64,000 nt of DNA from Schmidtea polychroa (lineage: Eukaryota): contig CM097886.1 of assembly GCA_044892525.1 (NCBI GenBank), forward strand, positions 153,140,001 to 153,204,000, in the 5' to 3' direction. Position 1 is the stretch's first letter; every line of letters starts with the position of its first letter. Position numbers and translations under genes: made by a program. The notes beneath the pieces were generated by a model, which worked only from the letters and a program-made list of their open reading frames with translations, had not been told where the DNA came from and made no database searches. Shown piece after piece: positions 1 through 45,391 of the stretch.

Positions 1-59
1 GTATACTTTACCCAAATTATTGTTCATCGAAAGAACATGATAATAATTGCCATTCTATA

Positions 60-6796: not shown

Positions 6797-9700
6797 TCAA
6801 TACTGTGAACGCTTAACAACTTTTAATAAAATTGGTGTAATAGGCGCAGTCAATCCGAATTTTTTAAATTTCATTTCATCCTAAAACAATATCAATATAA
6901 AAATGGTAGAAATATGTTTTACGAGAGTTTCTGAACAGGGCACGATTTCAAATTTTTGTAAAATAGTCACAATTGCCCATTTCACCTCAAGAAGAGCAAA
7001 TCTCATTCCAACACAATTCCTTGGTCCCATTCCAAACGGCATAAAAGAGTAGCCTCCACGAGTTTTCTTATTTTCATCATCAAATCTTGATTTATAACAT
7101 CAATAGTCAATCTTTCGACATTTCAATGCACATAATTTAACTATTATAATAATTGTATAATAAAATCTTATAAACTTGTGAAATCAAATATCAACGTGGA
7201 ATTTTATATTGGAAAGAATACCAATTCAGAAATTTTGGTAGTTAATCTAAACCCGCCAAACTTAATATCAACGGCCACCCACCCACAAACAAGTAGAAAT
7301 TTTCGGGAGAAGGAGAGAAGCAAAAAATATCAAAAGGAGAGTGTGGCAAAATACGAGAATTAGAGCAACAGAAAAAGAACCCTCAATTTTATTCGGTTTT
7401 TTTGATCCTAACAAATTCATTATTAGGTTGGTGATAAAATTAAAACTCTTACTCTGACTCCAAGCGTGTCTTTAACTAACCCATAAATAACACTTGACAA
7501 AAGAAGTCTATATTGATAATCACAAAAATTTCCACTTTACACTGCCAATAATTCAACACACCGCTCGGTGACTATACGATGATTATTGCAACATTTAGTA
7601 ACGAATAGCACTTGTGTACAATACCGGATTGAAAGATTACTAACTACTGATTTGTTTATCAACTGGGACTTTGAGTTGGTTGTTTTCTTTGACCTTCTTC
7701 GAAAACTTTATTCAAATATTCAAATAACTTCTTTTCGTTTATTTCTCAACTAATTATGTCAAAAACGGAGCAATTACAACGATTATTGGAGTATATAAGA
7801 AAACTCCAAATTCATATAATCGGCAGTAGCGTTGGTAGGGACGAAGAAACCGAGAATAGGAGTTTGGGGAAAAGAAGCAGAAACTGTTCATGTTTAAATT
7901 CAAGATAACGCATAATAATTTTATTTCCATCCACAGAGCCAGTTTTGAATAACAACAGTTTGTCCATGTCAATACCATAAGATAATGCCATCATTGAACA
8001 ACCTAATGGTCGCATCTCAGTTAATTGGGTAGAAAGCTGCTTAATATCCGCAATAGAACGACATATTATGTCACAAGGCATTTCATATCCATGTTTATAT
8101 CTAAATCGAGCTGCTTCCATTTGTGCACGACATACTTGAGATCGATAATCAGGGATCATACCAGTCATAACACCTCCAGTACTTTCAGTAATATTAAACA
8201 ATCTTGTAGCTGAACTCTTCTCAATCATTTTATCTGGAACCTTTCTTTGTGTAGCTACTACATCACAATTATTGCATCGAATACCAACGGAAATCCATCC
8301 ACCAAATAAATTTAATATTAATTGGCCAAAACCCACCACTAAAGTTATCAGATTCATACATTTCTTTATTAAAAGCAGCCATCATTAACAACTCTTTCCT
8401 TAAATCGAAACATAACTCATTCCAATACAATCGATCGATAAAAATCTAAATCTAAAAATTAGAACAAAATTACAACAACTAATTCATAAAAATTGCCATA
8501 CCTATTGCTCGCGTCTGTGTGCGCATACAAGCCAAAAACAAAGAAAAGAAAAGCGCACACAGACGCGAGATAAACTAACAACCCAACACAAAAATGACAT
8601 TGCTCGCGTCTGTGTGCGCACACAAATACAACGCACACACAGATGCGCATTGAGCTCACAATTTTCCAGAAACTGAAAACGAGAATTATAAAAGGAGCTG
8701 AAGGGTTTGAACGAAAGAGATTATCAAAGGAATTCGGATCAAAGAGTGAAAAAGAGAATCACCAGGTGAAACTTAGTTTAAATCGAACAAGGTCGAGACA
8801 TTACAGAGCGAAGCTCGATCCGGTATTGTAACGACTGTTGCTGATTGAAAATTGTTATTTATCACTGAGAGTTGTAAAATTGTAATAAACAAATATACGT
8901 TGGGAATTTTTGTTTATCGATTTTGGAATACGTGAAGTCAGAGTTATTAACGGTTGACTTTTCAATGTTACAAAACCCAACATTCGGTTACAGGAGGTAG
9001 GAAACGGATAATTATGCTAGGAGATTCAAAGGCGATATAGCCTGAAAAAAAAATCATGTCTCATAACCTAATTGAAGACGTGTGTTTGTCATACAAATAT
9101 ACGAAGCATTAAAATGATCGCTAACATCCTCAATTCGATGAGTCATGCTTTCCATCAGTCAATCAGAACGCTTTATGCCAGAGAGCTCACGTCTACCTAC
9201 TCACATCAGTGACGAGAAAATATAGAATTCATAATCGAGACATGTAAGATAATGAAATACCAGCTGACTAATGTAATCTTTGCGTCACCCACACACGTCG
9301 AATGTTTATTTATCTATCACACAACACAGCGAGAACCTTCTATCATACACACATTAGACACGACGCCCAAAAATTCAAAATTATTGTTAACTATGGCTGA
9401 ATATCGTCGATGAGGATGTATGTGGTAGTTAAAAATCTAAGAGAGGATTCACGAACGACACGAGAAGTTTGATTTTCAAATTTAGTAGGGAATTAAATTA
9501 TTAACGTAATAATAAAATCAATAAAAAAATCAAAGTTTTATCAAGGTTCCTTTAATTTCAACGAAATGAATTATAGAGATTTCTCGGGCAGACCAGTAGG
9601 TGACGATGAAACAAGTACAAGTGCAGTAGACGCGAACGGAGAAACGGATCTAGAGAAACTCAAGAACAGGTATCAACCAATGGAGAGCACCTGGTTTCAA

Positions 9701-10920: not shown

Positions 10921-10959
<39 letters not shown>

Positions 10960-13664
10960 GGTGGGTCGAAAAATTTTTTTTTCTCCAAACATGCCTAAAA
11001 AGTTGTGCTTATGCTAGAAAATGAAATATCCCTGCAAAAGACTGCTGTTTAAAAGGGTTTACAGGTCCCAACTTTTGTTTGTATGTATTAGTACTATCCC
11101 AGTAAAAATGCTCGCACACGTGCCATTGTAAATTCATCCTGCAATTTCATACTGGCTTTAACGAACAAGCAACTCTTTTCGCAAAAAAGGTGAAGGAAAT
11201 TTATATGAAGGCAAGTATCCCAACTGTTGAGTTCAGTAGTATTGTGGTTCGTGTCAAGCGACTAATATCAAAAGTGCGTGAATTAGAGAAGTATCCAGAA
11301 TGCAAGAGGTCATCTGCCAAATTTCAAGATAAGTTAAGCTCGTTTTCCAAATTGTTTGACATATGTTGCTGCAAATGTTTTAATGATGGTGCTCGTGGAA
11401 GAAGTCAGTGTACATGCCGATTGGCCTTGAAAATTCCTACCTTAGAGTGGGAGTTCTGGATTGACCAACAAACTACCAGAAACATGAAAATCGGAAATAC
11501 GGACAGACAGGAAACCTCAAAATTGAAGAGAAAACAAACGAAAAGCAGCCCTACAGGAAAAGGAAAACAAATGAAAAATGAAATAATGGACACTGAAGTT
11601 AACGATCTACATCCGACCTCAAGAAGTGACACGGAGAGTGAAGCCGCTAGTGATGAAAGTAAAGATAAGTTAGACAATTCAACAGAAAGCTCAGAGTCAA
11701 GCGTAGAAGAATGTGATGAATTTCAAAATAGAAGACATTATCCTGAATTAAGTAAAGCTGTTGACAGATGTGGTGTGAGCAACAGAGACACGTGTTTGCT
11801 AGTAAACGCTTTTCTGAAAGATATGGAACTGTTATCCTCTCAAACAATCATCGATCCCGCAAAATTACGGCGTCAGAGAAAGTACTGGAGGGAGAGAGAA
11901 ATTGAACAGCATTCAGCAGAAGCGAAAAACTTGATTTGCCTCGGTTTCGACGGGAAACAAGATTCCACCTTACTTCATAGAAGGATCCTAAAAGAGGAGC
12001 ATTATGTGATTGTCGCCTTTCCAGGGGATACATATATCGATCATGTTGTACCTCAAAGTAGTAAAGCTGTGGATATTGGCAAAGAAATCATGTCAATCAT
12101 CGTTAGCACGCAGTCCTCACTGACCCTTCAAGCAATTGTGTGCGATGGAACCAATACAAACACCGGAAAAAATAATGGAATAATCAGAAGACTCGAAAAA
12201 AGCCTAGGGCGACCTCTACAATGGCTGATATGCTTGTTGCATGCAAATGAATTGCCATTCAGGAAGTATTTTTCAGTCGTCGATGGTGGAGAAACAAAAG
12301 GTCCAAAAACGTCATGTGGTGAAATAGGAAGCGTTCTTGATTTTGATCCAAAAGACAAGCCCGTAGTAGCCTTTATGTCCCTTCCTGGAAAGGTCGTAGA
12401 TATTAGTGAAAATGTCAAGAAAGAATTGAACACTGATCAATTGTATTTCCTCAGAGTATGCTTGGCAGTCCAGAAAGGGTACCACAACAACAAGGATGTC
12501 CCTTTTCTACAAATGGCACAACCAGGAAATTTGAATCACAGTCGCTGGCTAACGAAAGCTAATAGAATTCTGCGACTATATATGTCCGAAACTGCTCCAT
12601 CTGAACCTCTCATGCGAATAGTGAAATTTATTGTCAATTTCTATGGACCGTCATGGTTTTATATAAAGACTCACTCGTCATGCCAAGATGGTGCAAGAAA
12701 TATTTTTTATATGCTCCAACTTCTGCAGGATTTGGATCCATCAGACCAAGAAATCATCTTTCCTGTCATTCAGAACAACAATTACTTCTCACATCCAGAA
12801 AATATACTCCTAGCTGCTGTTGGTGATGATGATGAAGAAATCAGAAAGTTTGCAACAGAAAAAATCATAACTGCAAGACAAAATTTTCTCCCTTCCGAAG
12901 TGATTCGCACTATGGACAAGAATACTGTCTTTCTTCAGTCGTCTGCTACATCATATGTTGACATGATTGACTGGACAAAATGTAATTTGACGCCTCCCCC
13001 TCTTTTATCTCATATATTGGATCATGAATTGAAGATGAATAAGAAAATTACATTAGAACAATTTCCCTGTCATTCTCAAGCCGTTGAAAGAGCCATCAAA
13101 GATGTTTCTTCTGCCAGTTGCAAAGTGTTTGGTCACAAGTCCAGACATGGTATGGTACTACTGTGTAAAAAATCAAGGAAGGAATTGCCCAAGGTGCAAA
13201 GCAAAGCTGATTTCATGTGACTTCTTTTTATGCCCTCGCTAATACATTTCTAAACTTTTGGCTGGATGTTTTTAATAAAAAATAATTTCGAAAGTTGATT
13301 TTTGTCTTTGAAAAGGATAATTCAAATTTGGCCCTTCCTAATCACTGACGTTGTCAGGATATATTTCAATGCGGGATGAGGACACAGAATATACTATCTC
13401 AGCCCAAGAGAGTAAATAATATACTTATAAGCTCTTAAGAAAGCTACATCTAAATATGGACAAAGGCGCAAAACACATTCCGACACTAGCCAAATTACAT
13501 TGTTTTCACACTTATGTTGAACTGCATTTTCGGAGAAAAGTTGGGAGCAGTAAATGTCCATAAATCTAAGTAAAATGGTTTGATTCGATTTTTCTATACC
13601 AAAATACAACTTTTTAACCATGTTTCCTTTCTTGAACTCAAAATTTATTAACATTCGACCCACC

Positions 13665-13710
<46 letters not shown>

Positions 13711-16700
13711 GAATCTGCACCTGTTAGGATATTTTACTTCAAAACTCAAAAAAGTATCGAAAGGATGGCATCACTACACGAAAAGAAATTACAGATAATT
13801 TTATTGAAATATTTAAAACTATGGCAACTTTTTTCAAAAAGCAATTAAAAGCATTATATTCAAGGATATAGATGAATCAATTTTTAAATATTTAAAATTT
13901 CGACGAGAAAACTCATTATTGTGGGAAGTCCAATTTTTATATTCAAAAACAAACATTTGAGGGAAATATTGTTATGGTTGGGTTTGAGCTCACTTGGGGC
14001 TTGCTTAGACAGTATAATAAGAAATGTATTAGTCGTTTAGAATAACTTGAGTAAATAGATAAAATAGAAATAGAAATAATAAGAATAAAAATAATTATTA
14101 TAAATAGATAGAAAATATAAATAGTAGTTTAAATAATATAAATAGATATAAATATTTAAAATTTAGTAATAATTAAATAAATATAGTACAGGTAACCCTC
14201 CTACAACGCGGCAGTTTTTAGGAACCTATCTACCGCGTTGTAGGAGGGTTACCTGCATATAAATATTAATTTAGCCTTGAATATAAAAGGACTTATTTTT
14301 TAGTAACAAGGTCGACAAATATTAGTCAGCAACGTGAAATAAATATTTAATCAGTGACAGCTTGGAAGATATTGAATTTCGGGAATATTGTGAGCAATTG
14401 TAAAGTCAACAGCTGGCCGATCAATAAACTAAGATAGTACTTAAAGCGAGAAATTTTTTGGAAATCATTTGTTAGAGTAAGTGAAAATTTACGAAAAGTT
14501 GTTGATTAGAAATAAAGTTCAAACTAAAAAGATAATTAACGTTATAAAGGTTATTTTGCCATAAATCGTAACAAAAGCCGTTTTTTATTTACAAAAACAG
14601 ATATTAGTTATCGATTCTCATCGATTAAACTAATTGTAACAGTTTTGAGGCTTGGGATAAAATTAATGTCGGTAATCTCGGCAATAGTTTTTTAAGGAAA
14701 CTGCATTGCAAGTGTTTATTAATTAAATATTAGAGGGTAGGTATTTAGGCAAAGTTACTATCATTTTGGATAGTAATCGATCGTGTTAAACTTCGGGTAT
14801 CCCTTGTGTTTTGCCTTTCACTGTTTAGCGTGCTGTTGATCAATTAGGATCCTGCATTCGCCGTCTTAGAAATACCTGAGGACGGTTTGTATAACCGATA
14901 TCTTTGCTTCTGTTTTATTGCGACAACCTTTTTTGGGTAACACGTTTTGTAATTTTTAAATGTATATCATAAACCATATTTGTATTTATTTGATAAATAA
15001 AGTTTATTATCTTAAGCGAGTGTGTTATTATTTGTGAAATTAACCAATCAAGAGAGCGTGTGTTAGTCGTATACCCACTTACGAACCTAACAATATTACA
15101 GAATTTGTGGCTCGTTTAATACAGCATGCTAACGATTGTTATTAATAACCTAAAGAAATGTGACTCACTTTAGGAAGAAATAATAAAATTGCAATGGTGT
15201 TGACATATATAAATAATTAAGAGGAATGTAATGGAGTTAGACAACTTGTCAATCTAGATCAGTTGAATGAAGCACACACAAAATATTCACAAAATATACC
15301 ACAAAGAACTCGCATGTGATTTCAAAACTCGCGAATAAATAAGTAATTAGCAGCGGGGAAATTCAGCACGTTTTACGAAGTATAATCAACGACAGTTTTA
15401 ACCTACAATTTGGGCAGTTGATTATCATTTCGGGAACTTCTCTTTGAAGAGTGTATGTTTTATTTGGTTTAGTTTTGATATACTAATATAGTTTTGGTAT
15501 GAATTTTTAAAATTAAATTCAGAAATACAATATAGCGTCACGAAAACCAATATTATTACGATAACATGGAAAATTTGCTTGTTTGGTGTTTAACCAAATA
15601 CATTATTTTTCCTTTAAATTCGTCTCTACTATCATATAGTATTTGAGCTTTGTTGGGAAAGTTCAAATCCATAGCATAAGATCTCGTAAACATGCCAATG
15701 CATCAACTCAGTCAAAGATATTAGAAAAATAATAAAGTTAAGGAGATATTATTAAACGAAGACAAGAAAGAAAATAATAAAGAATAAAATAGAAAAGAAT
15801 AACCAGAGCATTTTATTTTATTAGAATGGCTGAAACATTTATAGTATAAATTTTATAAATAAAATCAAATATTGTTAAATTTTTAAACATTTTATGAAAA
15901 TTATTTTCAGCGCAAAGATAAACACTATGACGAAGAGATTATTAAAAAAACATCAACTGATACTGGTCTCTATACTTCATTTTAAGGTTTTTGTGAATTT
16001 AAGGATAAGAAAAATATGGCGAAGAGATTGATTTATCATTCATTGTCTTTATCTTTTACTTTTGAAAATTCGAACAACTTATAGCAATATATGGACCTAC
16101 GATTGTATTATCCAGTTCAAACATGGCCATCATCCAGTGTTTTGATGATAAGTTGTGACCAAAAAAGAGAGAAATGTTTGCAAATTGTGATGGAAGAACG
16201 CGGAATCATTATAAACAATATCTCGCAGCAGTTGAATATAAGTAATATAGGTATATATAGTAACATAGCATCCTAAATAAATCTGGTGTAATAAAATTGG
16301 CATTCAGGTTCATCCCACACTTTCTTTCCTGAGATATGTGAAAAGAGTATGGAATGACTAATTCCTCAGAAGTTTAATAACTGTGGATGAAACCCCTCTA
16401 TCCTTGTATGTCTCTGAAACAAAGCGTAAGTCCAGCGAATAGAAACTCCTTGGAGAAACAAGTTCCAGGAAGATGCGAACTGGAACATGTTACCGAAAAT
16501 CAAGTTCATAATTTTTTGGGAAATATGTGGCATAATCTGTTGGGATTTCGTTGGAAAAGGCCTGAGAATTAGTTCTACATACAACAACGACCTCGTGGTC
16601 ATATTAATAAATCTATGTCTCTGGTTGGACTATGTTCTGATCTCGTTTATCAATTTACATGTAATAAGTGTCTTGACATGTGCACTGAAGAGACTTCTCG

Positions 16701-34700: not shown

Positions 34701-37700
34701 ACAATAATTAATACTGATTCAAAATTTTTATAAGTTGATGGGCATTTAAATGGGTTATTTAAAATCTTTAATTATATTTACTATAAGTTGAAATAGAATT
34801 GATTAATTAAATTAAATTAAAAAATAAATAAATATTGTTCATACAATCGATAATGATTAGTTTTTGCTGTCCTATTTGACTATGACAAGAAAACTGTCGA
34901 AATATATCGTAAATCGAATGTTTGAGTGGCGCTTTCTTCTAATTAAATCATTGGTATGCTTATTTAATTATTAATTTAATATAAACAGATGGCCTGTAGG
35001 TTCTGTAACGACTAGCATCAATATCAGTTCGAAACTATTGCATATAAAAGCTGGAAATTTACTCTCTTAATCTTGGTGTCGAAAATATTGTGACCAACAA
35101 CGGATGGTTAAATAAATGAAAATTAAATGGAGTTTGTAATAAAATATCATGGTGAAAATATCAAATAGTTAACCATTGAAAATATTGAGTTGAGAGTCAA
35201 TGAGTAATTGGTGGTAATTCTACAGTTATCAAACATATATAACATTACCAACCAGGACAAAGGAAGATAAAAATTCCAGTCAAGATTGTAGCCAACGACA
35301 ATGATTTAAAAAAGTATGAACAGTCAATTCAAAAGAGGAAGCAAGTGAAATCTACGATTTGATTTTCGGTTAACAATGGTGAAACTAAATGTTATATCAG
35401 AAAAGCAGAGTATAAAAAATTAAAACGTAGTCATAGTCTGAAGGTTATTCATTTAATTTTTGTGAGGAATTTTGTGAATTTTTGAAATTTGAAAAGTTGT
35501 TTTCTACATGAAGTTTGCGAATTTTGATGAATGAATTGAATTTAGATTGTGGTTCAATGTTTTGAAATTTTATAAAACCAAATAATCTGTTTGATAATTA
35601 TTGTAAAATATAAAAACCTTAACTAGAAAAAAAATGGAAAAAAATTTATTTTTAAAAAATTTAAAAAACGCAAAAAATGTAATTTCTAAATTAAATCACG
35701 ATTCAATCAAAAGTCAGATAATTTAAACACAAAAGATCACAATCTTCATAGTTTTTCTTAGACTGATTCAACAACTCTTTCAGAGTCGAAAATTCTCAAT
35801 TTTTCTTTAATAAACTTGAATCTTGCAGCAAAGGCTTATCATATCATTTACTAACCATTTTGTGAATTAATGTCACTACTAATAAACCATCATTCTATAT
35901 CTATAAATTTTACAAACAAGAATTGTATTTTTTAATAAAAAATCCCGTATTTAATGAATGCAAATATATAGTTTCACACTTAACACATTAAGTCCAAAGT
36001 TCATTATTTTATTTTATTTATTCTTAGCATTTATATTAGATAAATAAATTTCAGTAGTTGATACTTTGACAAATTTCAATTTTCGCATTCTGTAAAAAAT
36101 TCTGCGGAAAAAAACAGGGCGAGAATTTAAAAGGGTTTAATTGAATTGAATTTCAATGTGAGTATAAAATAAAAGAAAAAATTTAATGATCTTATAAAAT
36201 AAACTTAAATTCACCTATTATTTCAAAAATTTGGCGAGTATAACTATTAAAACTCCATTAACAAGATTTTTAGTTCATCCAAAAAATTATGATTATTAAT
36301 AGTCGAAGATTAGTTAAAGATAAATAAGGAGGTATTAAGGAGGTAAGGAGTAGTAGTTGAAAATGATTTATTAAAATGGCAATTAAATAACGAAAACATT
36401 CATTAAAAAGTAAACAGATTGTAATGTTAACAGGTTAAGAATAAAAAATAATTCAGTTAATCAAGGATCAATAAACAATATATAATTAATTATAATATAC
36501 TATTTACAATAAGTGCCAAATAAAGATATTATATATGTATGCACCAGTGCCGTATTTACCATTAGGCCAATATTAACCGGCCGAGATGAGGTACATGTCA
36601 AGGTACGACGAAAGCAGGAATTAAAAATGTAAATAATAAATTATGTAACAAGCCACGGTGGATCTAGTTCATTGTACACATACAAAGCGAAATTAGTACT
36701 CTTTGGATTGAAGTATTAATATTAAACTGATCCATAATTATAGAACATTTCCGGAAACTCTTTAATATAAATGGTGAAAGATAGTAATTATTGTTGATAT
36801 CATTGTTTACGAATTTAACTTTTACTCTTAGTCAAAACAGAAATGCTTCTAAAAGCAGACAAGTCAATGTAGCCTTGAACTTTATGATATTTTGCTGTAG
36901 TAAGAATATTACCAATAAATTAATGGTTCCAGGCCGCTTGTTAGGAACCCCCCCCCCCTTGTTAGGAAAATAAAAATTTTCAAAATGTATTCTATTATTA
37001 TAAAACTTTCTTTTTATAAATTTAATATTAAATTTTAAATTAATCAATAAAAATAGCATAAAAATAAATGAATTATATTTATTTCTTGATTCAAACGTTT
37101 TTAAATAAAAATTCGTTTTATTTATCAAATTTTATTTTGTATGCTCAATGAGAATATCTTGATCAGTATAAGAGCGCGGAACATACTAAGCCCATGAATA
37201 CAAAGGAAAGATATAATTCTGGTACTCTAGCTCTTGCTAATTTGATTAAATCAATGAGTAGAGCAATTAAACTTAGCTTAGGAAATTAAATAAAAATTTA
37301 TTTAATTTATATTTTGTTCATTTTAAATTATTTTTTTGTTAATAATAAAATTTATGTAATGAAAATATTTATTATAATTAAATAAATTTTGAAATTATTT
37401 TTACCTAGCAAGGGGATTTTCTAACAAGGGGCCGACACGTAAACTAATAAAATAAATAGTATGTCAATAATTTTCCAATACGGTGGATATAATATAAAGA
37501 CACCAACTCAACGGCCTTGAATACAGAAAACGGGGTAAAAGAAAATGGATCAACTAGACGTAATGAGTAAGATAATAAATTTGGATTCGTTTCTTCGGCG
37601 ATGTCGCTGGGCTAGATATGTTGAATACTTATGTCATGACTACAAGTCTGTTTACGAACTTGAATTACTTTATTATGACAAACCTAATAAATCTAAATCA

Positions 37701-40700
37701 AGCATTGATTATCACAATAATTCTTTGTTTCTGTTGATAAACTTGAAACTTACAATAAAGATATTTTGGATATACAAGGGTTCATTAACACTAAGTGATG
37801 ATCATGTTGACTGGATAATTAATGAATCTACAATTGAGTATTTGTTGAGAAATAGAATCAAACAAAATCTTGCAGACTTTATTCGGCGATTTGTAAATGA
37901 CGAAGTCACAGCCAGAGTTTTTCTTGTATATTCACCTAGTCATATATTTTAGGATGCTTACATTTTTTTATAATTCAAGTTCAATAATGTGCAGAATGCA
38001 CATTGCACATGACATGTTATAACTTGTACAAGTATTGACTAAGGAAGAAAATCCAAGAAATGTTTAAACATTATGTTATTAAAGTTTAAACTAATAAACT
38101 CACTAAGTTACTAATACTTAATTTTTTACACTTTTGTTTTAGATTTCTCTTTCCAATATTTATGTTAACATTTGTGGATGTCATATGCAATTTTAATTTT
38201 GGATAGGGCGAGAAATTTGCTGGAACTTAAAACCTAGATTAATATATCCATATGCTATTAAACTCAATTTTTAATATAAATATGGTTTCATTCATTTGAT
38301 TTGCTATCTAGATTAGGGCCCTTAAATAAGTGTTGATACGGGGGTCCTTATTCCGGCAATGAATGTAAATTATATAAGTATACTTTTTTCAATTTTCCAG
38401 AAGTAAAAGTAGGTGAAACTAAATTTCTAACTCTTTCCCAATCTTTGCCTTTCAAAATTGTCAACATTTTTTCAGTACTTTTTCCGTTGAATCCGATATC
38501 CTAAAAAAATATTCCTATAAAGAGAAAATTATAACAAAATATATTAAATATTTATTCGAAGGAAAATAGAATTTGAATAAGAAAATATTTCATGTATATA
38601 AAAACTTATTAGATTTCCTTCAATATTTAACTTTCTCTAACAAGTACCTTCCACATTAATAAAAATATCAATTTAATAATTAAATTTAAAATATATTATT
38701 AAATTAATTAAATTAAAATTAAATTAATTGTAACTAAAGCAAATTAAAATCGTTGTTTAAATAATCTTTTCTTTAAAAAAACGAACAATATATAAAACAA
38801 CTCATGAATCATTCGACATCTCAAGCGTTAACTCTCATCAGAACCAATAAAGAAAATATGCCAAACATTCAAGAAGCTGAAGCCTTCGTTTTCCTAGCTG
38901 CGATCTCTATGTTAATTAGCTTGATCATCAACACCTATTCAACCCAAGAAATAATCCTTAGAATACTAATTCTCAATTCTAGTGATTCTCCTGATAAAAT
39001 TCGTTACGAGAACCGTACTGACCTATCATCCACATTCAGTCAAAAGAAGTTAATTAACAATGTTATTACAGATAAAGATTCAAATACTTTCACATCGTAC
39101 GATACTTGAGTCTAAATGCCTAAATGCAAAATCATCAACAATCTCAGTACAATTGTCTGATCAAGTTATCGTGCTTTCGCTAAAACACTGACAACTGGAT
39201 CAAATATTTCCATGATTTCTTTCAATGTGGTTTACATTAAATCTTTATTCAAATTAGTTTTATGTCCCGACACGAGTAACCATAATTTATCAAAATTTTA
39301 AATATTTATATATCGAGTTTTCCAATTTTTCAAATATTTTAAATTCTTTTCATATTATTTTGAATGTTTTCATATTATTTTGAAAATTATAAAGATTTTT
39401 TTAAAGTATTCATTCTGTTGTAATAATTGAATAGGACTGTGTAATAATATTAAAGAATTAATATTATTATTCTTGTTTTAATTTGTGATAAAAACAAGAA
39501 TATATAAATTTGAATTTGGTCATTTTTTGAATTGTAACAATGGCGTCGCGAGCAGGATTTCCAGTATTAGATCTCACAAATGCAGATCAATGTCAAACAT
39601 GGATGATGACATTCAGTGCAATGACTCGAATTAACAAATGGGTTGATTCGGATAAACAGAATGTAATAACAGACAATTTCATTGCCGTATGCGGGTACGA
39701 GGCCCTTGGCAAAGTCATATCAATGCTGTCCCCGAGAAATATTCAAACAGTCAAATATGAAGAAATCGAAAGAACTATAAAATCGTTCTTACAACCAAAG
39801 ACAAGACTAGTGATAGCAGAAAGAAATAAATTTTTCTCATTAAAGCAGAAGGAATCATAAGGAATCAGCGATTTCATTCTCAGACTAAGAAAGGGAGCCG
39901 AATTCTGTCAATTCTCAAAACTAAAGGAATCAACAGATCCGACAGAAGACATGATTACAATGTCACTAATTGCAGGATTACATGACAGTGAATCTAAAAA
40001 GCGTTTGTTAGAAAAGATAGGCCATTCGGAACCAAGCGTCGACGACATCAAAGAGTTCGTTCAAAACATGGAGCAATTGAAAAGCTTCATCAACAAGAAC
40101 GTAACCCCTGCAGAATCAGAAGAAGAAAGCTCTACAGAATTGGACATAGGATCCATATGTGCAGTAAATTCATGTCACAAAGAATTGGTAAGCTGCTTAA
40201 TAAACTCAAACAAAATTCAGATGCAAATCGATACGGGAGCAGATGTCTCTATAATTTCGTCGAAACTTTGGAAAGACTTGGGTGAACCGAAGCTAAAACA
40301 TCATAATATGAAACTCACAGCCTACGACTGTCACATTATGAAATGCCTAGGTTACTTCACAGCAGAAGTAGAAACGGAAAAAAGAATTCATGCTATCAAG
40401 TTAACAGTTATTGAATCAGAGAAATCATATGGATTGTTGGGACAATATATTATTGAAGATACTATGACCATCAATTCAGCAACAGCAAAGAATAAATCGA
40501 GCAAATTCCTTCCAAGTATACGAGGTGTACAGGCAAAAATGGAACTCTTAAAAGATGCTAATAATTTCTTTTGCAGAGCAAGACCAGTACCGTTAGCATT
40601 AGAGAGCAGAGTCAACGCTGAGCTCCTACGCCTAGAAGAAATGGGTAAAATCTCCCCTTGTCGCGATCCAGTTGCCAATTGTTCACCAGTTGTATGGATC

Positions 40701-43700
40701 AAGAAAGACAATGGGGAATTGCACATGTGCGTTGATTTCAAGGTCCACGTAAACCGTAAGATTAAAACTGAAACGTATCCTCTGCCAAATATTGAGACTA
40801 TTTTTGCCCGTATGAAGAATGCAAAAAGATAAGCAAAGATAGATCTGAAATCGGCATATTGGCAAATCGAACTAGACAATAATGCAAGGCAACTTTCCAT
40901 CATAAATACCTCGAAAGGTCTATTCTACGTCAACCGCTTACAAATGGGTATGAAGAACTCATCTATATTCCAGAGAACAATGGAAGACATACTAGCCGAT
41001 ATAAAAGGCATTTTAATCTATCAAGACGATATATTAGTCTTTGGAGAGAATGACGAGGTTCTAAAAAACGATTAGAGGCGGTAAAGCAAAGATTAAAAGA
41101 AAAAAAAGATTACAATAAACAAGGAGAAATCAATCGAATATGTCGACGAAATAACGTTCCTCGGATTCAGTATTTCAAGCCGAGGCATCCAACCGGACCA
41201 AAAGCTGATCAATAAAATACAAGATATATCAGTGCCATCCAACAAAAAAGAAGTTGAAAGTTCTATAGGCTTAGTAAATTATTTCGGCCGGTTGATACCA
41301 CAATTCTCGAATAAAATATCACCGATAAATAACCTCCGAAAAAAAAGAAGCTCAATTCATATGGTCAAAGGAATGTCAAGAAAGTTTTGATAAGCTAAAA
41401 ACGGAACTAAGTTCCCATCCCATAGTTAGATCGTATTGTCTAAAAAAAGAAGCAACATTAACCACAGATGCATCGAAAGAAGCCATAGGAGCAGTCCTCG
41501 CACAAGAAGGACATCCAGTCATATTCGTCTCGAGGACATTATCGATAGCAGAAAAGAACTACTCTAATATAGAAAGAGAAGCATTAGCCATAGTCTGGTC
41601 AGTTTCAAGATTAAGCCACTTTCTATTAGGGCGAAAATTTACATTACAAACTGACCACCGCCCGCTCATATGTTTATTAGGAAGTAATCAAGCAATACCC
41701 GATCATACTTCTCTGCGAATTACGAAATGGGCTTTAAATCTGATGCAATATGATTACATCATTACACATGTTCCAGGAAAAGAAATTACTCATGCGGATG
41801 CATTGACGAGATTACGATTTAGTAATCAAGCGGTCGATTTTAAGACATTGAGCTATGCTAGAATGCACAGTGTCGTCTTTCAAACAATTTTAAAACCCCA
41901 AGAAGTAAAATGTGAGCTACAATTAGACACTCGTATACAAGGAATTATGAACAGGGTAAAACGTGGAAAATGGTCAAAATGCAGTCAGTATGAATCCTCA
42001 CTTAAGGCGGTTTCAGCATCTCTCACAATCGAAAATGGAATGCTATATAAAGGATCTCGTCTATTCATACCAGAACGTTTAAGACGAAAGGCGATAGATT
42101 CGTTCCACAAGGAATCTCACAGTGGCATCCAATCATCCTGCAGGATGATTCAAAACGCAGCATGGTGGCCTGGTATAACGAGAGACATCGAACAATATGT
42201 GAAAAAATGTGAAATATGTTCTACATTACGCCCCCAGAAACAGAAGACAGTCCACGAGTGGCCAAACGCCACACCCTTTGAAAGACTTCACATAGATTGG
42301 GCGTACTCCCGAGACGTCGGAAACATTTTAATAATCGTTGATTCAGGATCGGGATGGATCGAAGCCTTTAGAACCAAAGAACGCACAACTGAAAACGTCA
42401 TCAAATGCCTACGAACAGTATTCATCAGATTCGGAATACCAGAATGCATAGTATTCGACAACGCTCCTGAGTTTACATCAAAAGAATTTTTAGCATGGAT
42501 TGAGAATCAAGGAGCTCGAAAGATAGAATCTCCACCTTACTTTCCAATGGAAAATGGGAGGGCAGAGAGAGCTGTCCAGACAATAAAGAAGAGGATCAAA
42601 TGTTGGAAGCTAAGCCAGTGTCATATGGAATTTGACGTCTTCCTCCAGAAGATGTTATTTTATCATCGCATCTCAGCAAACTATTATGGTAAATCTCCGG
42701 CGGAAATGGTTTTTGGAAGGCAGATTAGAAGACCAATAGTGAGCACATTCGACAAAGGCCAATCAGTCGGATACAAGCCGTCCTCCAATCATGAGTTAAC
42801 AAATCAGAAATATCTTATGCCAAAAGGAAGAAACACGTCGTGGATAATGGACGTCTAGGGAGATGAGCCTGTCTTACGACTATCAAGCAATAATCAAATA
42901 TACTCCCCAGGCACCAAAAAAGCAACAGAAAAAACATTTACTTCTCAGGAGAACGCCGAGGACAATTCATATCAGCCTTCTCTCTTAACGGAGACTATGC
43001 CCGACGGCGATAACCGAGTGAGAAGTCAGAGATCAAGAAGACCTCCGAACCTTTACGGCGAATGGACACTAGAGAGAGACATGTAATAATATTAAAGAAT
43101 TAATATTATTATTCTTGTTTTAATTTGTGATAAAAACAAGAAAATATAAATTTGAATTTGGTCATTTTTTGAATTGTAACAGACTGCCACTAGGAATACA
43201 TGTATAGTTATTATCATTAGAATAAATAAAAAAATATTTTTAACTATTGATAACAAAATTTTGAATAGAGTAAATATGAAAGTATAATTTATTTGTTTGG
43301 AAAAATTCAAATTTTGGATTGTCTTTAAAATGGGGAAAATCAAGAGATGACGATTTAATTTCATTTATATTAAATAAAGTGTTTGAATCATAGCCATTCA
43401 AATAATTGATTTGGATCAAATATAGTTTTATAATGCGTTTTTTAATACTTGTGTGTGTGTGTGTGTGTGTGTATTATACTTGTCAGTAAATCAATTAAGA
43501 TAAATTTTTAATCAGTACTTAATTATTATTTATGACCAGTAATAAATTTTGACCAATGATAATTTTTAGGTGTTACTTTTTATGGAGTTTTAATGACTGA
43601 AACATCAAAAATATTGTTCCCAAAGTATAAACGTAAATTCCAAGGGATAAATATGTTTCGAATGACCGTTACCAAAAGAATCAATAACATATGTAATAAT

Positions 43701-45391
43701 ATAATGGAGCAATTAAAAACTAAAGCCAAAGAATTTAAATATTGTACTTTGTTGATAAATAAAAGTAGACATTGGAGATATCTAACAATTAATTGTCTGT
43801 TTAGAAAATAATTGACAGCAATGCAGCCTATTAAAGGAGCAACGGATGGTGTGGATATTATGAGAATTTAAGAATTGTTTCTTATCATTGAATATTTCCT
43901 TTAAAAAGATTTGCAATATCACTACTGATGATGCATCGATCATGAAGGGAAAAAATTTCGATTTTCAAGGCCAATTTAGAAAAAAATATAATCCATTTTA
44001 CTACTTGACATAATCCAGCAAGATTCTCTTTGAAAAGCCGGATTATAAATATGCGATATGTTACTAAACATAACCAAACTTATCAATACCATTTGTGCAA
44101 ACAGCTTAAATCATAGGTTGTTTAAAGAATTTGTTTAAGAATCTACTATACAAGTTTTTGAAAGAATATGGAACCTCCGGAATCAATTATTTGATTTTTT
44201 CGTGAGAATAACGTGAATAGAGAATTACTATATGTATATAATATTGATTGAGTAATAGAATTGGTCTTTTATACTGATATTTTGTGCTATATGAATGAGC
44301 TAAATTTGAAACTAAAAAGCAAAAACCAACTGATTGAAAATATCTGTAATCATTTACATTACTTTTGAATGCAACTACATCAATTTATTTAGTAAATGAT
44401 GGGTGGCATAGTTATCCAGATTGCAAAAAAAACGCTATTAACATATTTGACTTCAGATGTGTGCAAAATGTTCCTCTGTGATGAAAAAAATATTATCAAA
44501 ATGCGATACTCGTTTTCAAGATATCAGGGAAACTGAAAATGACATCAGATGTACTAAAAATAGCTTCATCTCTACAATTGGAATTAATCAAATTGCAGTC
44601 ATACATCTTCAGCAATAATTTCGTAGTAACAATCAGGAATTTTACCGAAATCATGACAATAATTTTCCATTTGAAATACAAAATTTAAGGTTTGGCTTAA
44701 TTTAATTTATATAGTAAACAAACGTGACAATATATGGTTACTAAGACACCATGAAACATTTAGTAATCTTTTGATAGTCTATCTTTTACTTTCCCAAACC
44801 CATATAGTCAATACCTTGAATGATGCATTATAATATAAAAAAATTCCAACGGTTTATATAAATTTAATTTTGAAATTAAATATACAGGTTAAATGTAAAA
44901 AATAAGGTATTAAAATATTATTACTTTAAAATGGTTTAAAGTATAAATAGAATAACAAAACATTAAAACTTGCCAATCTGTCTGTGAAAGATTTAGCCTC
45001 TTTAATTAGGATTTGTTTCAACATTTCTTCATCTGACACGATACAAGATCTAATATTTCCCAAATAAAATCTATTATAAATCACTATAAAAATTTCATTA
45101 AATAATTCATAATATTACGGATAAATATTTCCATATTTTTGATGATTTAATTTATCCATTTCATGAACACCAAATCTAAATAAATCAATAAAATTTCCAA
45201 TGTATGGCCATGGTGGTGGACCTCTGTGACCAAGTTTTATATGAAGGTTTTGTTTACTTTGCCCATATCTAAAATTAAATAAAATATAATATCTTTATTA
45301 AATATTGCTGATACCTGTATAATAAATAAAGTCCAAAAAGAAGGAGTAAAGATTTTATATCCAAAATATAACTTAGTAAATATTGTATCAT
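6797..45391 (-). CDS. Cytochrome P450, clan 3 / CYP3A-like (CYP-A), 11 exons, 518 aa
   Basis: Exons: 45391-45315, 45268-45119, 45070-44974, 38500-38384, 34406-34321, 33643-33495, 33445-33306, 33260-33009, 19260-19019, 7085-6923, 6880-6797. They sum to 1557 nt with compatible phases and no internal stop. Motifs: TM anchor, GPPPWPYIGN, WERVR, AGFETT, ETLR, FGMGPRNCVG. Intron 9 crosses an N-gap. Confidence 0.88.
7927..8303 (-). pseudogene. PSMA6: Truncated intronless proteasome alpha-6 (alpha1) subunit fragment
   Basis: Translation ...VATQRKVPDK...LFNITESTGGVMTGM...RSQV.RA..EAA.FRYKHGYEMPCD....IADI.Q..TQ..EMRPLGCSM matches the PSMA6 core. The N-terminal DRHITIFSPEG region and the C-terminus are absent. 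Confidence 0.85.
8505..8648. repeat. GC-rich inverted plus direct repeat (double hairpin)
   Basis: CTCGCGTCTGTGTGCGC (8508-8524) is the exact reverse complement of 8553-8569. A 21-bp direct copy at 8600-8620 has an imperfect partner at ~8631-8648. Confidence 0.9.
10923..10956. repeat. (TA)n microsatellite, left flank of the hAT-like element
   Basis: Direct reading. Confidence 0.95.
10957..13667 (+). mobile_element. hAT-superfamily (hATm-like) DNA transposon inserted in a (TA)n microsatellite
   Basis: Perfect 15-bp inverted ends TTAGGGTGGGTCGAA (10956-10970 / 13654-13668), with (TA)n tracts directly on both sides and an internal transposase ORF. The subfamily label is from recall. Confidence 0.8.
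11190..13220 (+). CDS. DDE transposase (hAT-like), apparently intact
   Basis: 676-aa ORF (first ATG at 11205) with GFDGKQD, CDGTNTNTG, the CxxH motif CLLHANELP, and C-terminal PCHSQAVERAIK. Confidence 0.85.
   Translation: MKEIYMKASIPTVEFSSIVVRVKRLISKVRELEKYPECKRSSAKFQDKLSSFSKLFDICCCKCFNDGARGRSQCTCRLALKIPTLEWEFWIDQQTTRNMKIGNTDRQETSKLKRKQTKSSPTGKGKQMKNEIMDTEVNDLHPTSRSDTESEAASDESKDKLDNSTESSESSVEECDEFQNRRHYPELSKAVDRCGVSNRDTCLLVNAFLKDMELLSSQTIIDPAKLRRQRKYWREREIEQHSAEAKNLICLGFDGKQDSTLLHRRILKEEHYVIVAFPGDTYIDHVVPQSSKAVDIGKEIMSIIVSTQSSLTLQAIVCDGTNTNTGKNNGIIRRLEKSLGRPLQWLICLLHANELPFRKYFSVVDGGETKGPKTSCGEIGSVLDFDPKDKPVVAFMSLPGKVVDISENVKKELNTDQLYFLRVCLAVQKGYHNNKDVPFLQMAQPGNLNHSRWLTKANRILRLYMSETAPSEPLMRIVKFIVNFYGPSWFYIKTHSSCQDGARNIFYMLQLLQDLDPSDQEIIFPVIQNNNYFSHPENILLAAVGDDDEEIRKFATEKIITARQNFLPSEVIRTMDKNTVFLQSSATSYVDMIDWTKCNLTPPPLLSHILDHELKMNKKITLEQFPCHSQAVERAIKDVSSASCKVFGHKSRHGMVLLCKKSRKELPKVQSKADFM
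13668..13707. repeat. (TA)n microsatellite, right flank of the hAT-like element
   Basis: Direct reading. Confidence 0.95.
14189..14255. mobile_element. 67-bp mini-MITE (pogo/Tigger-type CAGGT ends)
   Basis: Perfect 23-bp inverted repeat CAGGTAACCCTCCTACAACGCGG with a 21-nt spacer. TA on the left flank, CA on the right. Confidence 0.75.
14635..15100 (+). mobile_element. Probable solo LTR
   Basis: Begins TGTAACA, ends ATTACA, and contains AATAAA followed by GT-rich sequence. Flanks TAAT/GAAT are a near-TSD. The right end is uncertain by about 8 bp. Confidence 0.5.
16090..16600 (+). pseudogene. Decayed mariner (Mos1/SETMAR-type) transposase remnant
   Basis: Fragments ITVDET..LYVSETKRKS and IIFWEICGIICWDFVGKGLRISSTY match mariner VT.DE.W..Y.PE.K and VFWD..GII..D.L..G..INS. 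Many stops and frameshifts. Confidence 0.7.
16620..16880 (+). pseudogene. Penelope-like GIY-YIG endonuclease 3' remnant
   Basis: CSDLVYQFTCNKC...EETSRHLCIRACEH and a later PKINVQ match the Penelope EN pattern VY...C..C...Y.G.T.R.L..R..EH...P.LN.Q. Confidence 0.6.
17256..17456. other. Assembly gap (N run)
   Basis: 201 N. Confidence 1.
17519..18960 (+). mobile_element. Tc1/IS630-like DNA transposon, full length
   Basis: About 44-bp TIRs starting CAGGGTTT (5 mismatches), TA on both flanks, subterminal TGACA/TGTCA repeats, 1442 bp long. Confidence 0.9.
17678..18793 (+). CDS. DD34E transposase (Tc1/IS630 family)
   Basis: 371-aa intact ORF with an HTH region, FIDEVGF and IMDNVKFH...LPPYSPFLNPIE. 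There are 34 residues between the second D and the E. Confidence 0.92.
   Translation: MARQINQFPASIANNTEIEVESDNTAEPAIRNTFRVQRRNSTTSNADRDRVITAYDDGTSIVDISRILSIKRTTIYGILKKYHNTGVVEADKRGGDHPQKLTENQKNQVKEWVDNNCQLLLKVLAEKVFTEFQIRISTTYVYNLLSRFHYSMKRLHLIPERRNSTEVIETRKEYALNFSSILSIYSEQELIFIDEVGFNVSMRTTRGRSQIGTPATLNVPTIRSRNISIACAMNKNGLLFYKSFNRALNKEKFIEYITELKEVLIDKEIHRCVFIMDNVKFHKSPEVLSAIKNENTTVKFLPPYSPFLNPIENMFSKWKEITKRTNPRNEDDLRRAIENGSTLISSQDCSNYVRNMWSYIPRCIEGEIILN
19581..19638. mobile_element. 58-bp hAT-type mini-MITE
   Basis: TAGGGTTACCAGAC ... GTCTGGTAACCATA (13/14 inverted match). An 8-bp ATTATATT direct repeat flanks it within +/-1 nt. Confidence 0.6.
23216..24586 (+). pseudogene. Mutator/MULE transposase with FLYWCH domain, disrupted
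   Basis: FLYWCH-like N-terminus (...KC..Y....C.A........HNH), DGTFK, QLYTIHG, TDFELAAINA, YFE..WIG, P.F....W and SHPTMW. Split by several stops and frameshifts. Confidence 0.85.
28756..29779 (+). mobile_element. Non-autonomous hAT element (internal-deletion derivative)
   Basis: 15-bp TIR CAGTGTTTCGAACCC, perfect 8-bp TSD TTTTATAC and subterminal GAACCC repeats. Internal coding remnant: YLDPRF...EFWEQ...VPATQVSVERAFSALK (hAT dimerisation domain). Confidence 0.93.
31419..31530. mobile_element. Left end of a hAT-type MITE (fragment)
   Basis: TAGGGATGGCAA start followed by repeated ATCCGGATA subterminal motifs. No partner end seen. Confidence 0.45.
31851..32146. mobile_element. pogo/Tigger-type MITE
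   Basis: CCGTATTTTTAC ... GTAAAAATACGG perfect inverted ends, TA on both flanks. Confidence 0.8.
36932..37433. mobile_element. MITE with imperfect long TIRs
   Basis: GGCCGCTTGTTAGGA..CCCCTTGTTAGG pairs with CCTAGCAAGGGG...CTAACAAGGGGCC. No TSD found. Confidence 0.55.
39440..43181 (+). mobile_element. Ty3/Gypsy LTR retrotransposon, compact and disrupted
   Basis: 100-bp LTRs at 39440-39539 and 43082-43181 (1 mismatch), 5-bp TSD GACTG, PBS TGGCGTCGCGAGCAGG and a purine tract before the 3' LTR. Domain order is gag, PR (IDTGA), RT (YQDD), RH (TDAS..A, TDH.PL), IN (HHCC, D-D-E). Confidence 0.95.
39540..42858 (+). pseudogene. Gypsy gag-pol with in-frame stops and frameshifts
   Basis: TAA at 39858 and 40830, and frame changes near 41065, 41105 and 41345. 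The integrase portion 41743-42858 is open. Confidence 0.9.
43449..43472. repeat. (TG)n microsatellite
   Basis: Direct reading. Confidence 0.9.
43590..44620 (+). pseudogene. hAT-Charlie (GTF2IRD2/EPM2AIP1-like) transposase remnant
   Basis: Fragments TVTKRI..I..N..EQLK, MQPIKG.T.G.DI, ITTD.AS.M.G and YTDI..YMNELNLKLK.K. Heavily disrupted. Confidence 0.75.

What the first reader, a model, noticed from the sequence alone, without database searches (positions are those of the whole stretch)
6797..45391. A P450 gene inflated to 38.6 kb by TE-filled introns next to a paralogue with a 50-bp homologous intron
Seen in sequence: CYP-A introns are 46, 48, 6473, 3977, 677, 49, 45, 13748, 11933 and 42 bp; CYP-B introns are 43, 50, 3013, 1844, 1767, 44, 1458, 1903, 50 and 41 bp. 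Intron 9 is 50 bp in B but 11.9 kb in A, while intron 7 is 45 bp in A and 1.46 kb in B. No intron falls between 50 and 677 bp. All exons stay in frame. Inference: minimal introns can flip to giant TE sinks after one insertion, so the spliceosome handles both ~45-nt and >10-kb introns in one transcript.
Basis: partly seen in the sequence, partly recalled or inferred. Interest (0 to 1): 0.72.

Follow-up and report, generated by a model that had tools for sequence, protein, structure and literature searches.

The report
Planarian P450 gene with transposon-swollen introns
This is a real, expressed cytochrome P450 gene of the flatworm Schmidtea polychroa whose tiny (~45-base) and huge (up to 13.7-kb, transposon-filled) introns are spliced from one transcript, but this two-size pattern is already published for planarian genomes, so the case is ordinary.

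Summary
CYP-A is 518 aa and CYP-B 509 aa. Both are intact CYP3-clan P450s with the same 10 intron positions and phases.

RNA-like contigs from two studies join CYP-A exons 4 to 8 across introns of 3977, 677, 49 and 45 bp. Their overhangs match the end of exon 3 and the start of exon 9. This confirms the 6473-bp intron, which has a GC-AG donor, and the 13,748-bp intron.

The exon 9-to-10 junction, which crosses the N-run at 17256-17456, was not seen directly. It rests on indirect evidence only.

Introns 3, 4, 8 and 9 hold multi-copy transposons, many of them young. The 677-bp intron 5 is single-copy.

The assembly statistics match schPol2, the published Schmidtea polychroa genome. Sharply bimodal planarian introns and transposon-driven intron growth in this genus are already published (PMC4978528, PMC11410931).

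Four further paralogues in the same cluster span about 14-28 kb, have introns up to 17 kb, and include intermediate introns of 72-287 bp.

"Flip after one insertion" is not shown. The long introns carry several transposon generations, and the direction of the size changes is ambiguous. Verdict: real, already known, low interest.

The parts
6797..45391 (-). CYP-A, a CYP3-clan cytochrome P450 gene of 11 exons and 518 aa. Exons (high..low): 45391-45315, 45268-45119, 45070-44974, 38500-38384, 34406-34321, 33643-33495, 33445-33306, 33260-33009, 19260-19019, 7085-6923, 6880-6797.
   Evidence: Model and translation. Pfam p450 on exons 8, 9 and 10, covering consecutive profile positions 240-307, 312-386 and 388-439. 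Spliced RNA-like contigs.
51881..63623 (-). CYP-B, the tandem paralogue, 11 exons and 509 aa, 64.7% identical to CYP-A. Exons: 63623-63559, 63515-63366, 63315-63219, 60205-60089, 58244-58159, 56391-56243, 56198-56068, 54609-54358, 52454-52213, 52162-52000, 51958-51881.
   Evidence: No RNA check was made for B.
38501..44973 (-). CYP-A intron 3 (6473 bp), a GC-AG intron with donor ttg|GCAAGT.
   Evidence: The contig overhang behind 38501 matches the last 30 letters of exon 3 at 30 of 30. The paralogue B has GT at the same site.
39440..43181 (+). Young Ty3/gypsy-type LTR retrotransposon, antisense, inside intron 3. It has 100-bp LTRs at 99% identity, and its gag-pol is broken into several frames.
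   Evidence: LTRs: (D5). Aspartyl protease, RT, RNase H and integrase domains. At least 30 genomic copies at 96-98%.
34407..38383 (-). CYP-A intron 4 (3977 bp), which contains high-copy repeats such as 34770-34966.
   Evidence: Joint 34406->38384 seen in X1, X2 and X3. DNA-run word depth reaches 6029 against a background of about 10.
33644..34320 (-). CYP-A intron 5 (677 bp), single-copy sequence with no recognisable transposon.
   Evidence: Joint 33643->34321. The only hit in the genome is itself.
33261..33305 (-). CYP-A mini-intron 7 (45 bp, donor GTTCGT). Mini-intron 6 (49 bp) lies at 33446-33494.
   Evidence: Joints skipping 45 and 49 letters in X1, X2 and X3, absent from the DNA run X5. 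The exon 7/8 join also appears in the related protein fragment P0001.
19261..33008 (-). CYP-A intron 8 (13,748 bp).
   Evidence: The overhang before 33008 matches the start of exon 9 at 29 of 30 letters and is unique in the window. 4241 first-look repeat candidates in the genome.
23183..24583 (+). FLYWCH/MULE transposase remnant, antisense, in intron 8.
   Evidence: Pfam FLYWCH and MULE. Copies at 77-85%.
28973..29786 (+). hAT-derived element of about 810 bp, antisense, in intron 8.
   Evidence: hAT dimerisation domain. At least 20 copies at 96-99%.
7086..19018 (-). CYP-A intron 9 (nominally 11,933 bp, including the N-run). This junction was not seen in RNA.
   Evidence: Model. Parity of exon 9 and exon 10 copies in the cluster. 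Contig lengths.
17256..17456 (.). N-run (201 letters) inside intron 9. Continuity across it is untested.
   Evidence: The flanks do not overlap each other, and no repeat copy spans it.
17503..18963 (+). Complete Tc1/mariner transposon with an open 391-aa transposase, terminal inverted repeats and TA flanks. It is antisense and ends 55 bp from the exon 9 donor.
   Evidence: DDE_3 and HTH domains. At least 25 copies at 96-99%. Element ends read.
10923..13707 (+). Very young high-copy element with a 704-aa ORF of unknown family, antisense, in intron 9.
   Evidence: At least 35 copies at about 100% identity and 12,226 first-look candidates. No Pfam match. The atlas finds only unnamed eukaryotic clusters.
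7815..8381 (-). Proteasome alpha-like ORF. It is a passenger fragment of a high-copy LTR element, not a nested gene.
   Evidence: Pfam Proteasome. At least 1562 first-look loci, of which 150 were scored at 81-97%. Earlier notes from this scan.
16602..17170 (.). Old dispersed repeat just left of the N-run.
   Evidence: 3657 first-look candidates, with copies at 68-75%.
52824..52975 (.). Second N-run, inside CYP-B intron 8.

Best explanation
CYP-A is one real, transcribed, intact CYP3-clan P450 gene of the planarian Schmidtea polychroa. It sits in a tandem cluster of at least six paralogues. It has the intron architecture typical of planarians. One class of minimal introns (41-51 nt here) is presumably recognised across the intron. 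A second class runs from hundreds of bases to more than 10 kb, and its length is set mainly by accumulated transposon insertions, which are almost all antisense to the gene.

CYP-A is the largest of the cluster only because four of its introns have taken in several transposons, many of them recently. The same pre-mRNA is spliced at both kinds of intron, including one GC-AG intron.

Shown: the gene model, splicing of introns 3-8, and the transposon content. Inferred: the exon 9-10 join across the N-run, the recognition mode of the short introns, and the history of the size changes.
For: - All intron lengths were reproduced and the frames are open, with the I-helix AGFETT, ETLR and FxxGxRxCxG motifs present.
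- Pfam p450 matches exons 8-10 on consecutive profile stretches.
- The nearest named relatives are CYP3A-like, and the best PDB matches are CYP3A4, 3A5 and 3A7.
- Contigs of 1538 and 1549 nt (X2, X3) and 755 nt (X1) carry the joints for introns 4-7. Their overhangs equal the end of exon 3 and the start of exon 9. The DNA-like run X5 lacks these joints.
- The contigs extend 327 nt upstream of exon 4 (exons 1-3 total 324 nt) and 465-476 nt downstream of exon 8 (exons 9-11 total 489 nt). This fits the full model. An unspliced run-on would have entered a 25+-copy mariner after 55 nt.
- The cluster holds six exon 9 copies and six full exon 10 copies, each pair in the right order and orientation, with no orphan.
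- Transposon identity and copy numbers.
- Genome identity: total length, contig count and the 189,691,935-bp scaffold match schPol2.
- Published background: sharp bimodal introns in S. mediterranea (PMC4978528), small versus large intron classes in planarians (bioRxiv 10.64898/2025.12.11.693146), and intron expansion by transposons in Schmidtea (PMC11410931).
Against: - The exon 9-to-10 junction was never seen, and the N-run lies between those exons.
- Orphan copies of partial exon 10 plus exon 11 exist elsewhere in the genome (C4, seven copies at 91% to CYP-A). Stray 3' fragments of this gene type are therefore not rare.
- The runs are only guessed to be RNA, and they come from a strain with a few differing letters.
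- CYP-B has no RNA check.
- Intron 5 has no transposon.
Confidence: 0.85

Rival explanations
1. The N-run hides a misjoin or missing sequence. Under this reading, exons 10-11 at 7085-6797 belong to another paralogue or are an orphan fragment, and CYP-A's true 3' exons lie elsewhere.
For: The junction was not observed. The flanks of the N-run share nothing and no repeat spans it. Orphan exon 10-11 fragments exist on C4 and at C2:153.538 Mb.
Against: Exon 10 here is full length, with an AG acceptor and the right phase, and it restores the conserved H-R-F-D join. The orphans lack its first 9 residues. The cluster has exactly as many full exon 10 copies as exon 9 copies, each paired in cis. There is no second exon 10-like frame anywhere in the CYP-A span. 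The RNA contigs run 465-476 nt past exon 8, as the model predicts.
Confidence: 0.07
2. The two size classes are an attractor that works in both directions, not a one-way sink. Long introns can also collapse back to the minimal length. CYP-A intron 7 (45 bp) and CYP-B intron 9 (50 bp) would then be secondary contractions.
For: Each of these is the only short intron at a position that is long in the other five paralogues. One-way growth needs at least 8 changes across the variable positions 2, 3, 4, 7 and 9. Allowing contraction needs about 5 (my own count). The protein tree is unresolved.
Against: The tree is a star, so the event counts are soft. Transposon insertion is clearly frequent: copies of the elements found here are 96-100% identical. 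Independent expansions are therefore cheap. Intron sequence between the old paralogues is saturated, so ancestry of the long introns cannot be read from it. Even the 91%-identical pair P3/P4 shares only 70-220 bp next to the exons.
Confidence: 0.3
3. One reading: each giant intron arose when a single transposon insertion flipped a minimal intron into a sink.
For: Transposon units of 0.8-3.7 kb are far larger than 45 nt, so one hit does cross the empty size zone. The mariner sits only 55 bp from the exon 9 donor.
Against: Intron 9 holds at least four elements, whose genomic copies are 68-75%, 81-97%, 96-99% and about 100% identical. Intron 8 holds at least three. Intron 5 has none. The paralogues have introns of 72-287 bp. 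No empty-site allele or target duplication bracketing a ~45-nt remainder was found.
Confidence: 0.15

Closest known systems
Bimodal intron length distribution of planarian genes (Solana et al. 2016, eLife, PMC4978528; Dugesia/Schmidtea comparison, bioRxiv 10.64898/2025.12.11.693146)
   Same: A tight class of minimal introns plus a class of 1-10 kb, in the same genes. The split between small and large lies near 300 bp.
   Different: The short class here peaks at 41-51 nt, whereas the 2016 paper gives 57 bp for S. mediterranea. Two introns exceed the stated 1-10 kb range. This is a single gene family, not a genome-wide count.
Intron expansion by transposon insertion in the genus Schmidtea (Ivankovic et al. 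2024, Nat Commun, PMC11410931)
   Same: Same genus, and by its statistics the same assembly (schPol2). DNA and LTR/gypsy elements inside introns lengthen the genes.
   Different: That paper argues from genome totals, chiefly for S. nova and S. lugubris. Here the individual insertions and their relative ages are laid out for one locus of S. polychroa.
CYP3-clan P450s (vertebrate CYP3A4/5/7, thromboxane synthase CYP5A1, arthropod 'CYP3A-like' genes)
   Same: Pfam p450 match. The best named relatives and the best solved structures are CYP3A. The heme-binding, ExxR and I-helix motifs are present, as is an N-terminal membrane anchor.
   Different: Only about 35-43% identity to named proteins, measured through the planarian relative P0005. 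It probably needs its own family name. No substrate is known.
GC-AG introns
   Same: The donor GCAAGT follows an exon-final G, the acceptor is a normal AG, and splicing is confirmed in transcript contigs.
   Different: Nothing unusual. At the same intron 3 position, paralogue B has GT; B's own GC donor is at intron 10.

Membership tests
Cytochrome P450 (PF00067) | Profile match above Pfam's gathering score | tested here: met
   Exons 8, 9 and 10 score 50-63 bits each against a cut-off of 22.8, on consecutive profile stretches.
Cytochrome P450 (PF00067) | Heme-thiolate loop FxxGxRxCxG, the ExxR of helix K, and the I-helix (A/G)GxxT | tested here: met
   FMPFGMGPRNCVG, ETLR and AGFETT can be read in the 518-aa translation.
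Cytochrome P450 (PF00067) | Monooxygenase activity and bound heme | not testable with these tools
   This needs expression and a CO-difference spectrum.
CYP3 clan | Nearest characterised relatives are CYP3A/CYP5A-type | tested here: met
   All 14 PDB matches for exon 9 are CYP3A4, 3A5 or 3A7. The named hits of the planarian relative P0005 are 'CYP3A-like' proteins or thromboxane synthase.
CYP3 clan | More than 40% identity to a named CYP family (nomenclature rule, from my own knowledge) | tested here: inconclusive
   The best named hit is 43% over 60% of P0005, and most are 35-40%. CYP-A itself was not searched at full length, because it has no single reference.
Planarian two-class intron architecture | A tight short class and a separate long class within one gene | tested here: met
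   Across A and B, 9 of 20 introns are 41-50 bp and 11 are 677-13,748 bp. Six paralogues.
Planarian two-class intron architecture | Both classes removed from the same transcript | tested here: met
   Single contigs carry the joints of 45, 49, 677 and 3977 bp, plus overhangs across the 6473- and 13,748-bp introns. Intron 9 was not seen.
Ty3/gypsy LTR retrotransposon (39440-43181) | Two LTRs flanking protease, RT, RNase H and integrase in that order | tested here: met
   Target-site duplication was not tested.
Tc1/mariner transposon (17503-18963) | DDE transposase with an HTH domain, terminal inverted repeats, and TA target duplication | tested here: met

The most novel reading that the evidence does not exclude
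Within this P450 cluster, intron size class switches in both directions. Long, transposon-laden introns are occasionally cut back to almost exactly the minimal ~45-50 nt: CYP-A intron 7 and CYP-B intron 9 are each the lone short intron where five paralogues are long. This would point to a strong deletion or selection attractor at the minimal spliceable length, not a one-way transposon sink.
Probability: 0.3. Interest if true: 0.45.

Novelty: already known. Interest (0 to 1): 0.17.

Why it matters
The value is as a worked example. It shows, insertion by insertion and with transcript support, how a planarian gene grows to 25 times its coding length while the neighbouring introns stay at the minimum. 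The six-paralogue table could be used to ask whether minimal introns can re-form from long ones. It does not open a new question. The bimodality and the transposon-driven intron growth are both published for this genus.

Tried and rejected
- **Exon 9-10 junction through protein databases.** A search with exon 9 found no candidate of 44-140 aa. A search with the 360-aa planarian relative P0005 found no full-length CYP-A or CYP-B, only P0151. P0151 is 66% identical to CYP-A, and the own-genome search shows it comes from another species.
- **Continuity across the N-run.** The flanks share no overlap. The old repeat on the left ends at 17170 and the mariner on the right starts at about 17503, so no element spans it. 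I read no letters for the gap from other copies.
- **The single read-laying run** went on 32800-38700, within the operators' 6,000-letter limit.
- **Proteasome-like ORF as a nested gene or retrocopy.** Rejected. It has more than 1,500 loci and is a known passenger in LTRs.
- **Polarising intron-size changes from intron homology.** Even the 91%-identical pair P3/P4 shares only 70-220 bp next to the exons.
- **Tree of the paralogues.** It is unresolved.
- **The look-up of sequencing runs** failed twice as busy before it answered.

Full report
**1. The observation**

The heme-binding motif and all P450-like frames lie on the minus strand. A frame-by-frame comparison of the two halves of the window paired ten coding blocks of a gene at 45.4-6.8 kb (CYP-A) with ten blocks of a gene at 63.6-51.9 kb (CYP-B). 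I read the boundaries directly and assembled both models.

The models give 518 and 509 aa with no stop. CYP-A introns are 46, 48, 6473, 3977, 677, 49, 45, 13748, 11933 and 42 bp. CYP-B introns are 43, 50, 3013, 1844, 1767, 44, 1458, 1903, 50 and 41 bp. All ten positions and phases are shared.

Three details were not in the finding. A intron 3 and B intron 10 need a GC donor (ttg|GCAAGT). A intron 7 has a weak GTTCGT donor. A second N-run (52824-52975) sits in B intron 8.

**2. The N-run, tested first**

The N-run at 17256-17456 lies inside intron 9, so reading frame is not the issue. The issue is whether exons 10-11 are linked to exons 1-9.

- The two flanks share no overlap.
- The left flank is an old dispersed repeat that ends at 17170.
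- The right flank is 46-60 bp of low-copy sequence followed by a complete Tc1/mariner at about 17503-18963.
- No repeat copy spans the N-run, so continuity could not be shown this way. I did not look up the missing letters.

The indirect evidence favours the join:
- The whole genome holds six exon 9 copies and six full-length exon 10 copies in the C2 cluster. Each pair is in the right order and orientation, with intron 9 at 50 bp, 1.4, 2.4, 2.6, 4.2 and 11.9 kb.
- There is no other exon 10-like frame in the CYP-A span.
- Exon 10 is complete and restores the conserved H-R-F-D join.

One caution remains. Orphan copies of partial exon 10 plus exon 11 exist: seven on C4 at 91% to CYP-A, and one on C2 with a stop.

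**3. Transcript evidence**

Four runs that hold only the exonic share of words (0.50-0.67) are probably RNA. Four others hold all words and are probably DNA. I laid three RNA-like runs and one DNA-like run on 32800-38700.

- Contigs of 1538 nt (X2), 1549 nt (X3) and 755 nt (X1) carry joints skipping 45, 49, 677 and 3977 letters. All are CT..AC on the plus strand, which is GT..AG for the gene.
- The DNA-like run X5 covers the introns continuously and lacks these joints.
- The overhang before 33008 equals the start of exon 9 in 29 of 30 letters. The overhang behind 38501 equals the end of exon 3 in 30 of 30. Both are unique in the window.

Introns 3 (6473 bp, GC-AG), 4, 5, 6, 7 and 8 (13,748 bp) are therefore removed from one transcript.

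The contigs extend 327 nt beyond exon 4 on the 5' side, where exons 1-3 total 324 nt. They extend 465-476 nt beyond exon 8 on the 3' side, where exons 9-11 total 489 nt. This fits the full model. An unspliced run-on past exon 9 would hit the 25+-copy mariner after 55 nt, and a word-based assembly would be expected to break there. That last step is inference.

**4. What fills the introns**

- **Intron 3:** a Ty3/gypsy element at 39440-43181 with 100-bp LTRs at 99% identity, carrying protease, RT, RNase H and integrase. It has at least 30 copies at 96-98%.
- **Intron 4:** stretches with DNA word depth up to about 6000 against a background of about 10.
- **Intron 5:** unique in the genome.
- **Intron 8:** a FLYWCH/MULE remnant, an ~810-bp hAT-derived element (at least 20 copies at 96-99%) and a 255-bp repeat.
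- **Intron 9:** the mariner (at least 25 copies at 96-99%, open 391-aa transposase), a 2.8-kb element with a 704-aa ORF (at least 35 copies at about 100%, 12,226 first-look candidates), an old repeat (68-75%), and a proteasome alpha-like ORF. That ORF has more than 1,500 loci. Earlier notes of this scan identify it as a passenger fragment in the LTRs of a pol-less BEL/Pao family.

Every transposon coding remnant with a Pfam domain in the introns of A and B lies antisense to the gene. So does the domain-less 704-aa ORF. This is the familiar orientation bias.

**5. The wider cluster**

I fetched 140 kb of the cluster and modelled exons 2-11 of four more paralogues. They span about 14-28 kb. Introns 2-10 are:

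| Paralogue | Introns 2-10 (bp) |
|---|---|
| P3 | 46, 1047, 843, 1170, 42, 7793, 2378, 4214, 51 |
| P4 | 46, 3656, 287, 17109, 47, 786, 3024, 1421, 51 |
| P5 | 6893, 83, 45, 4056, 72, 1192, 2484, 2596, 47 |
| P6 | 3129, 86, 49, 1718, 72, 2313, 3221, 2353, 47 |

- CYP-A is the largest of a set of similar genes, not an exception.
- The empty 50-677 bp zone is not absolute.
- Size class varies at positions 2, 3, 4, 7 and 9.
- A's short intron 7 and B's short intron 9 are each alone among six.
- The protein tree does not resolve the order of the lineages.
- Intron interiors are unrelated even between the 91%-identical pair P3/P4. The direction of change cannot be read from these data.

**6. Identity and what is known**

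G000 has 781,270,316 bp in 1012 contigs, and the window's scaffold is 189,691,935 bp. Table 1 of Ivankovic et al. 2024 gives schPol2 (Schmidtea polychroa) as 781,290,622 bp, 1013 contigs, N50 189,691,935 bp and GC 28.11%. The window is therefore from S. polychroa.

- That paper attributes gene lengthening in the genus to intron expansion, partly by transposon insertion.
- Solana et al. 2016 report a sharp bimodal intron distribution in S. mediterranea, with one mode at 57 bp and another at 1-10 kb.
- A 2026 preprint splits planarian introns into small and large at 316 bp.

The proteins are CYP3-clan-like. The best solved relatives are CYP3A4, 3A5 and 3A7. The named relatives of the planarian homologue P0005 are 'CYP3A-like' proteins or thromboxane synthase at 31-43% identity.

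**7. Verdict**

The structure is an instance of a published, genome-wide property of planarians. The evidence points instead to cumulative insertion, with the direction of class changes left open. The one unverified link is exon 9 to exon 10 across the N-run, which I rate at about 0.9.

Noticed in passing
G000:C4:89949807-90832630 (seven loci, e.g. 90007772-90008010) and C2:153537919-153538143: Orphan copies of partial exon 10 (91% aa identity to CYP-A), a mini-intron and exon 11. No other P450 exon lies within 10-20 kb. The seven C4 copies are near-identical and 22-33 kb apart within two groups (89.95-90.03 and 90.78-90.83 Mb) that lie about 0.75 Mb apart, as if carried by a larger repeat unit.
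   Followed up: partly
window 7815-8381 (-): A proteasome alpha-like ORF inside CYP-A intron 9. It has more than 1,500 loci in the genome at 81-97% identity. It matches the PSMA6 passenger fragment that earlier agents placed in the LTRs of a pol-less BEL/Pao retrotransposon.
   Followed up: partly
window 10923-13707 (+): A 2.8-kb element with an open 704-aa frame and no Pfam family. It has at least 35 copies at about 100% identity and 12,226 first-look candidates, so it looks currently active. Other copies carry about 458 bp more at one internal point.
   Followed up: partly
window 3-3845 (+): A 1281-aa open frame that runs off the window start. It has a weak Endonuclease_7 match, and its atlas neighbours (score 0.97) carry DNA_pol_B_2. 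It is probably the protein-primed polymerase of a Polinton/Maverick-type element just downstream of CYP-A.
   Followed up: partly
G000:C2:45.36-45.94 Mb, C2:156.8-158.8 Mb, C1:3.2-4.9 Mb, C1:209.3 Mb: Many intron-less open frames of about 480-527 aa that match a P450 end to end at 23-27% identity. They form a second, single-exon P450 clade in tandem arrays, in contrast with the 10-intron cluster studied here.
   Followed up: no
window 44972-44973 and 51998-51999 (-): Two GC-AG introns with the same donor, ttg|GCAAGT: CYP-A intron 3 (6473 bp, confirmed in transcripts) and CYP-B intron 10 (41 bp, model only). At each position the other paralogue has GT.
   Followed up: partly
window 54805-54861 (-), inside CYP-B intron 7: A 57-bp copy (96.5% identical) of the 3' part of CYP-B exon 8, lying 431 bp upstream of the real exon. 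A 157-169-bp repeat is shared by introns 7 and 8 (53860-54016 and 55702-55870, 90% identical).
   Followed up: partly
window, introns of CYP-A and CYP-B: All six transposon coding remnants (gypsy, the 704-aa ORF, mariner, MULE, hAT and DDE_1 at 62003-62332) lie on the plus strand, antisense to both genes.
   Followed up: no
window 47803-48354 (+): An integrase fragment (zinc-binding and core domains) in the 6.5-kb spacer between CYP-B and CYP-A.
   Followed up: no
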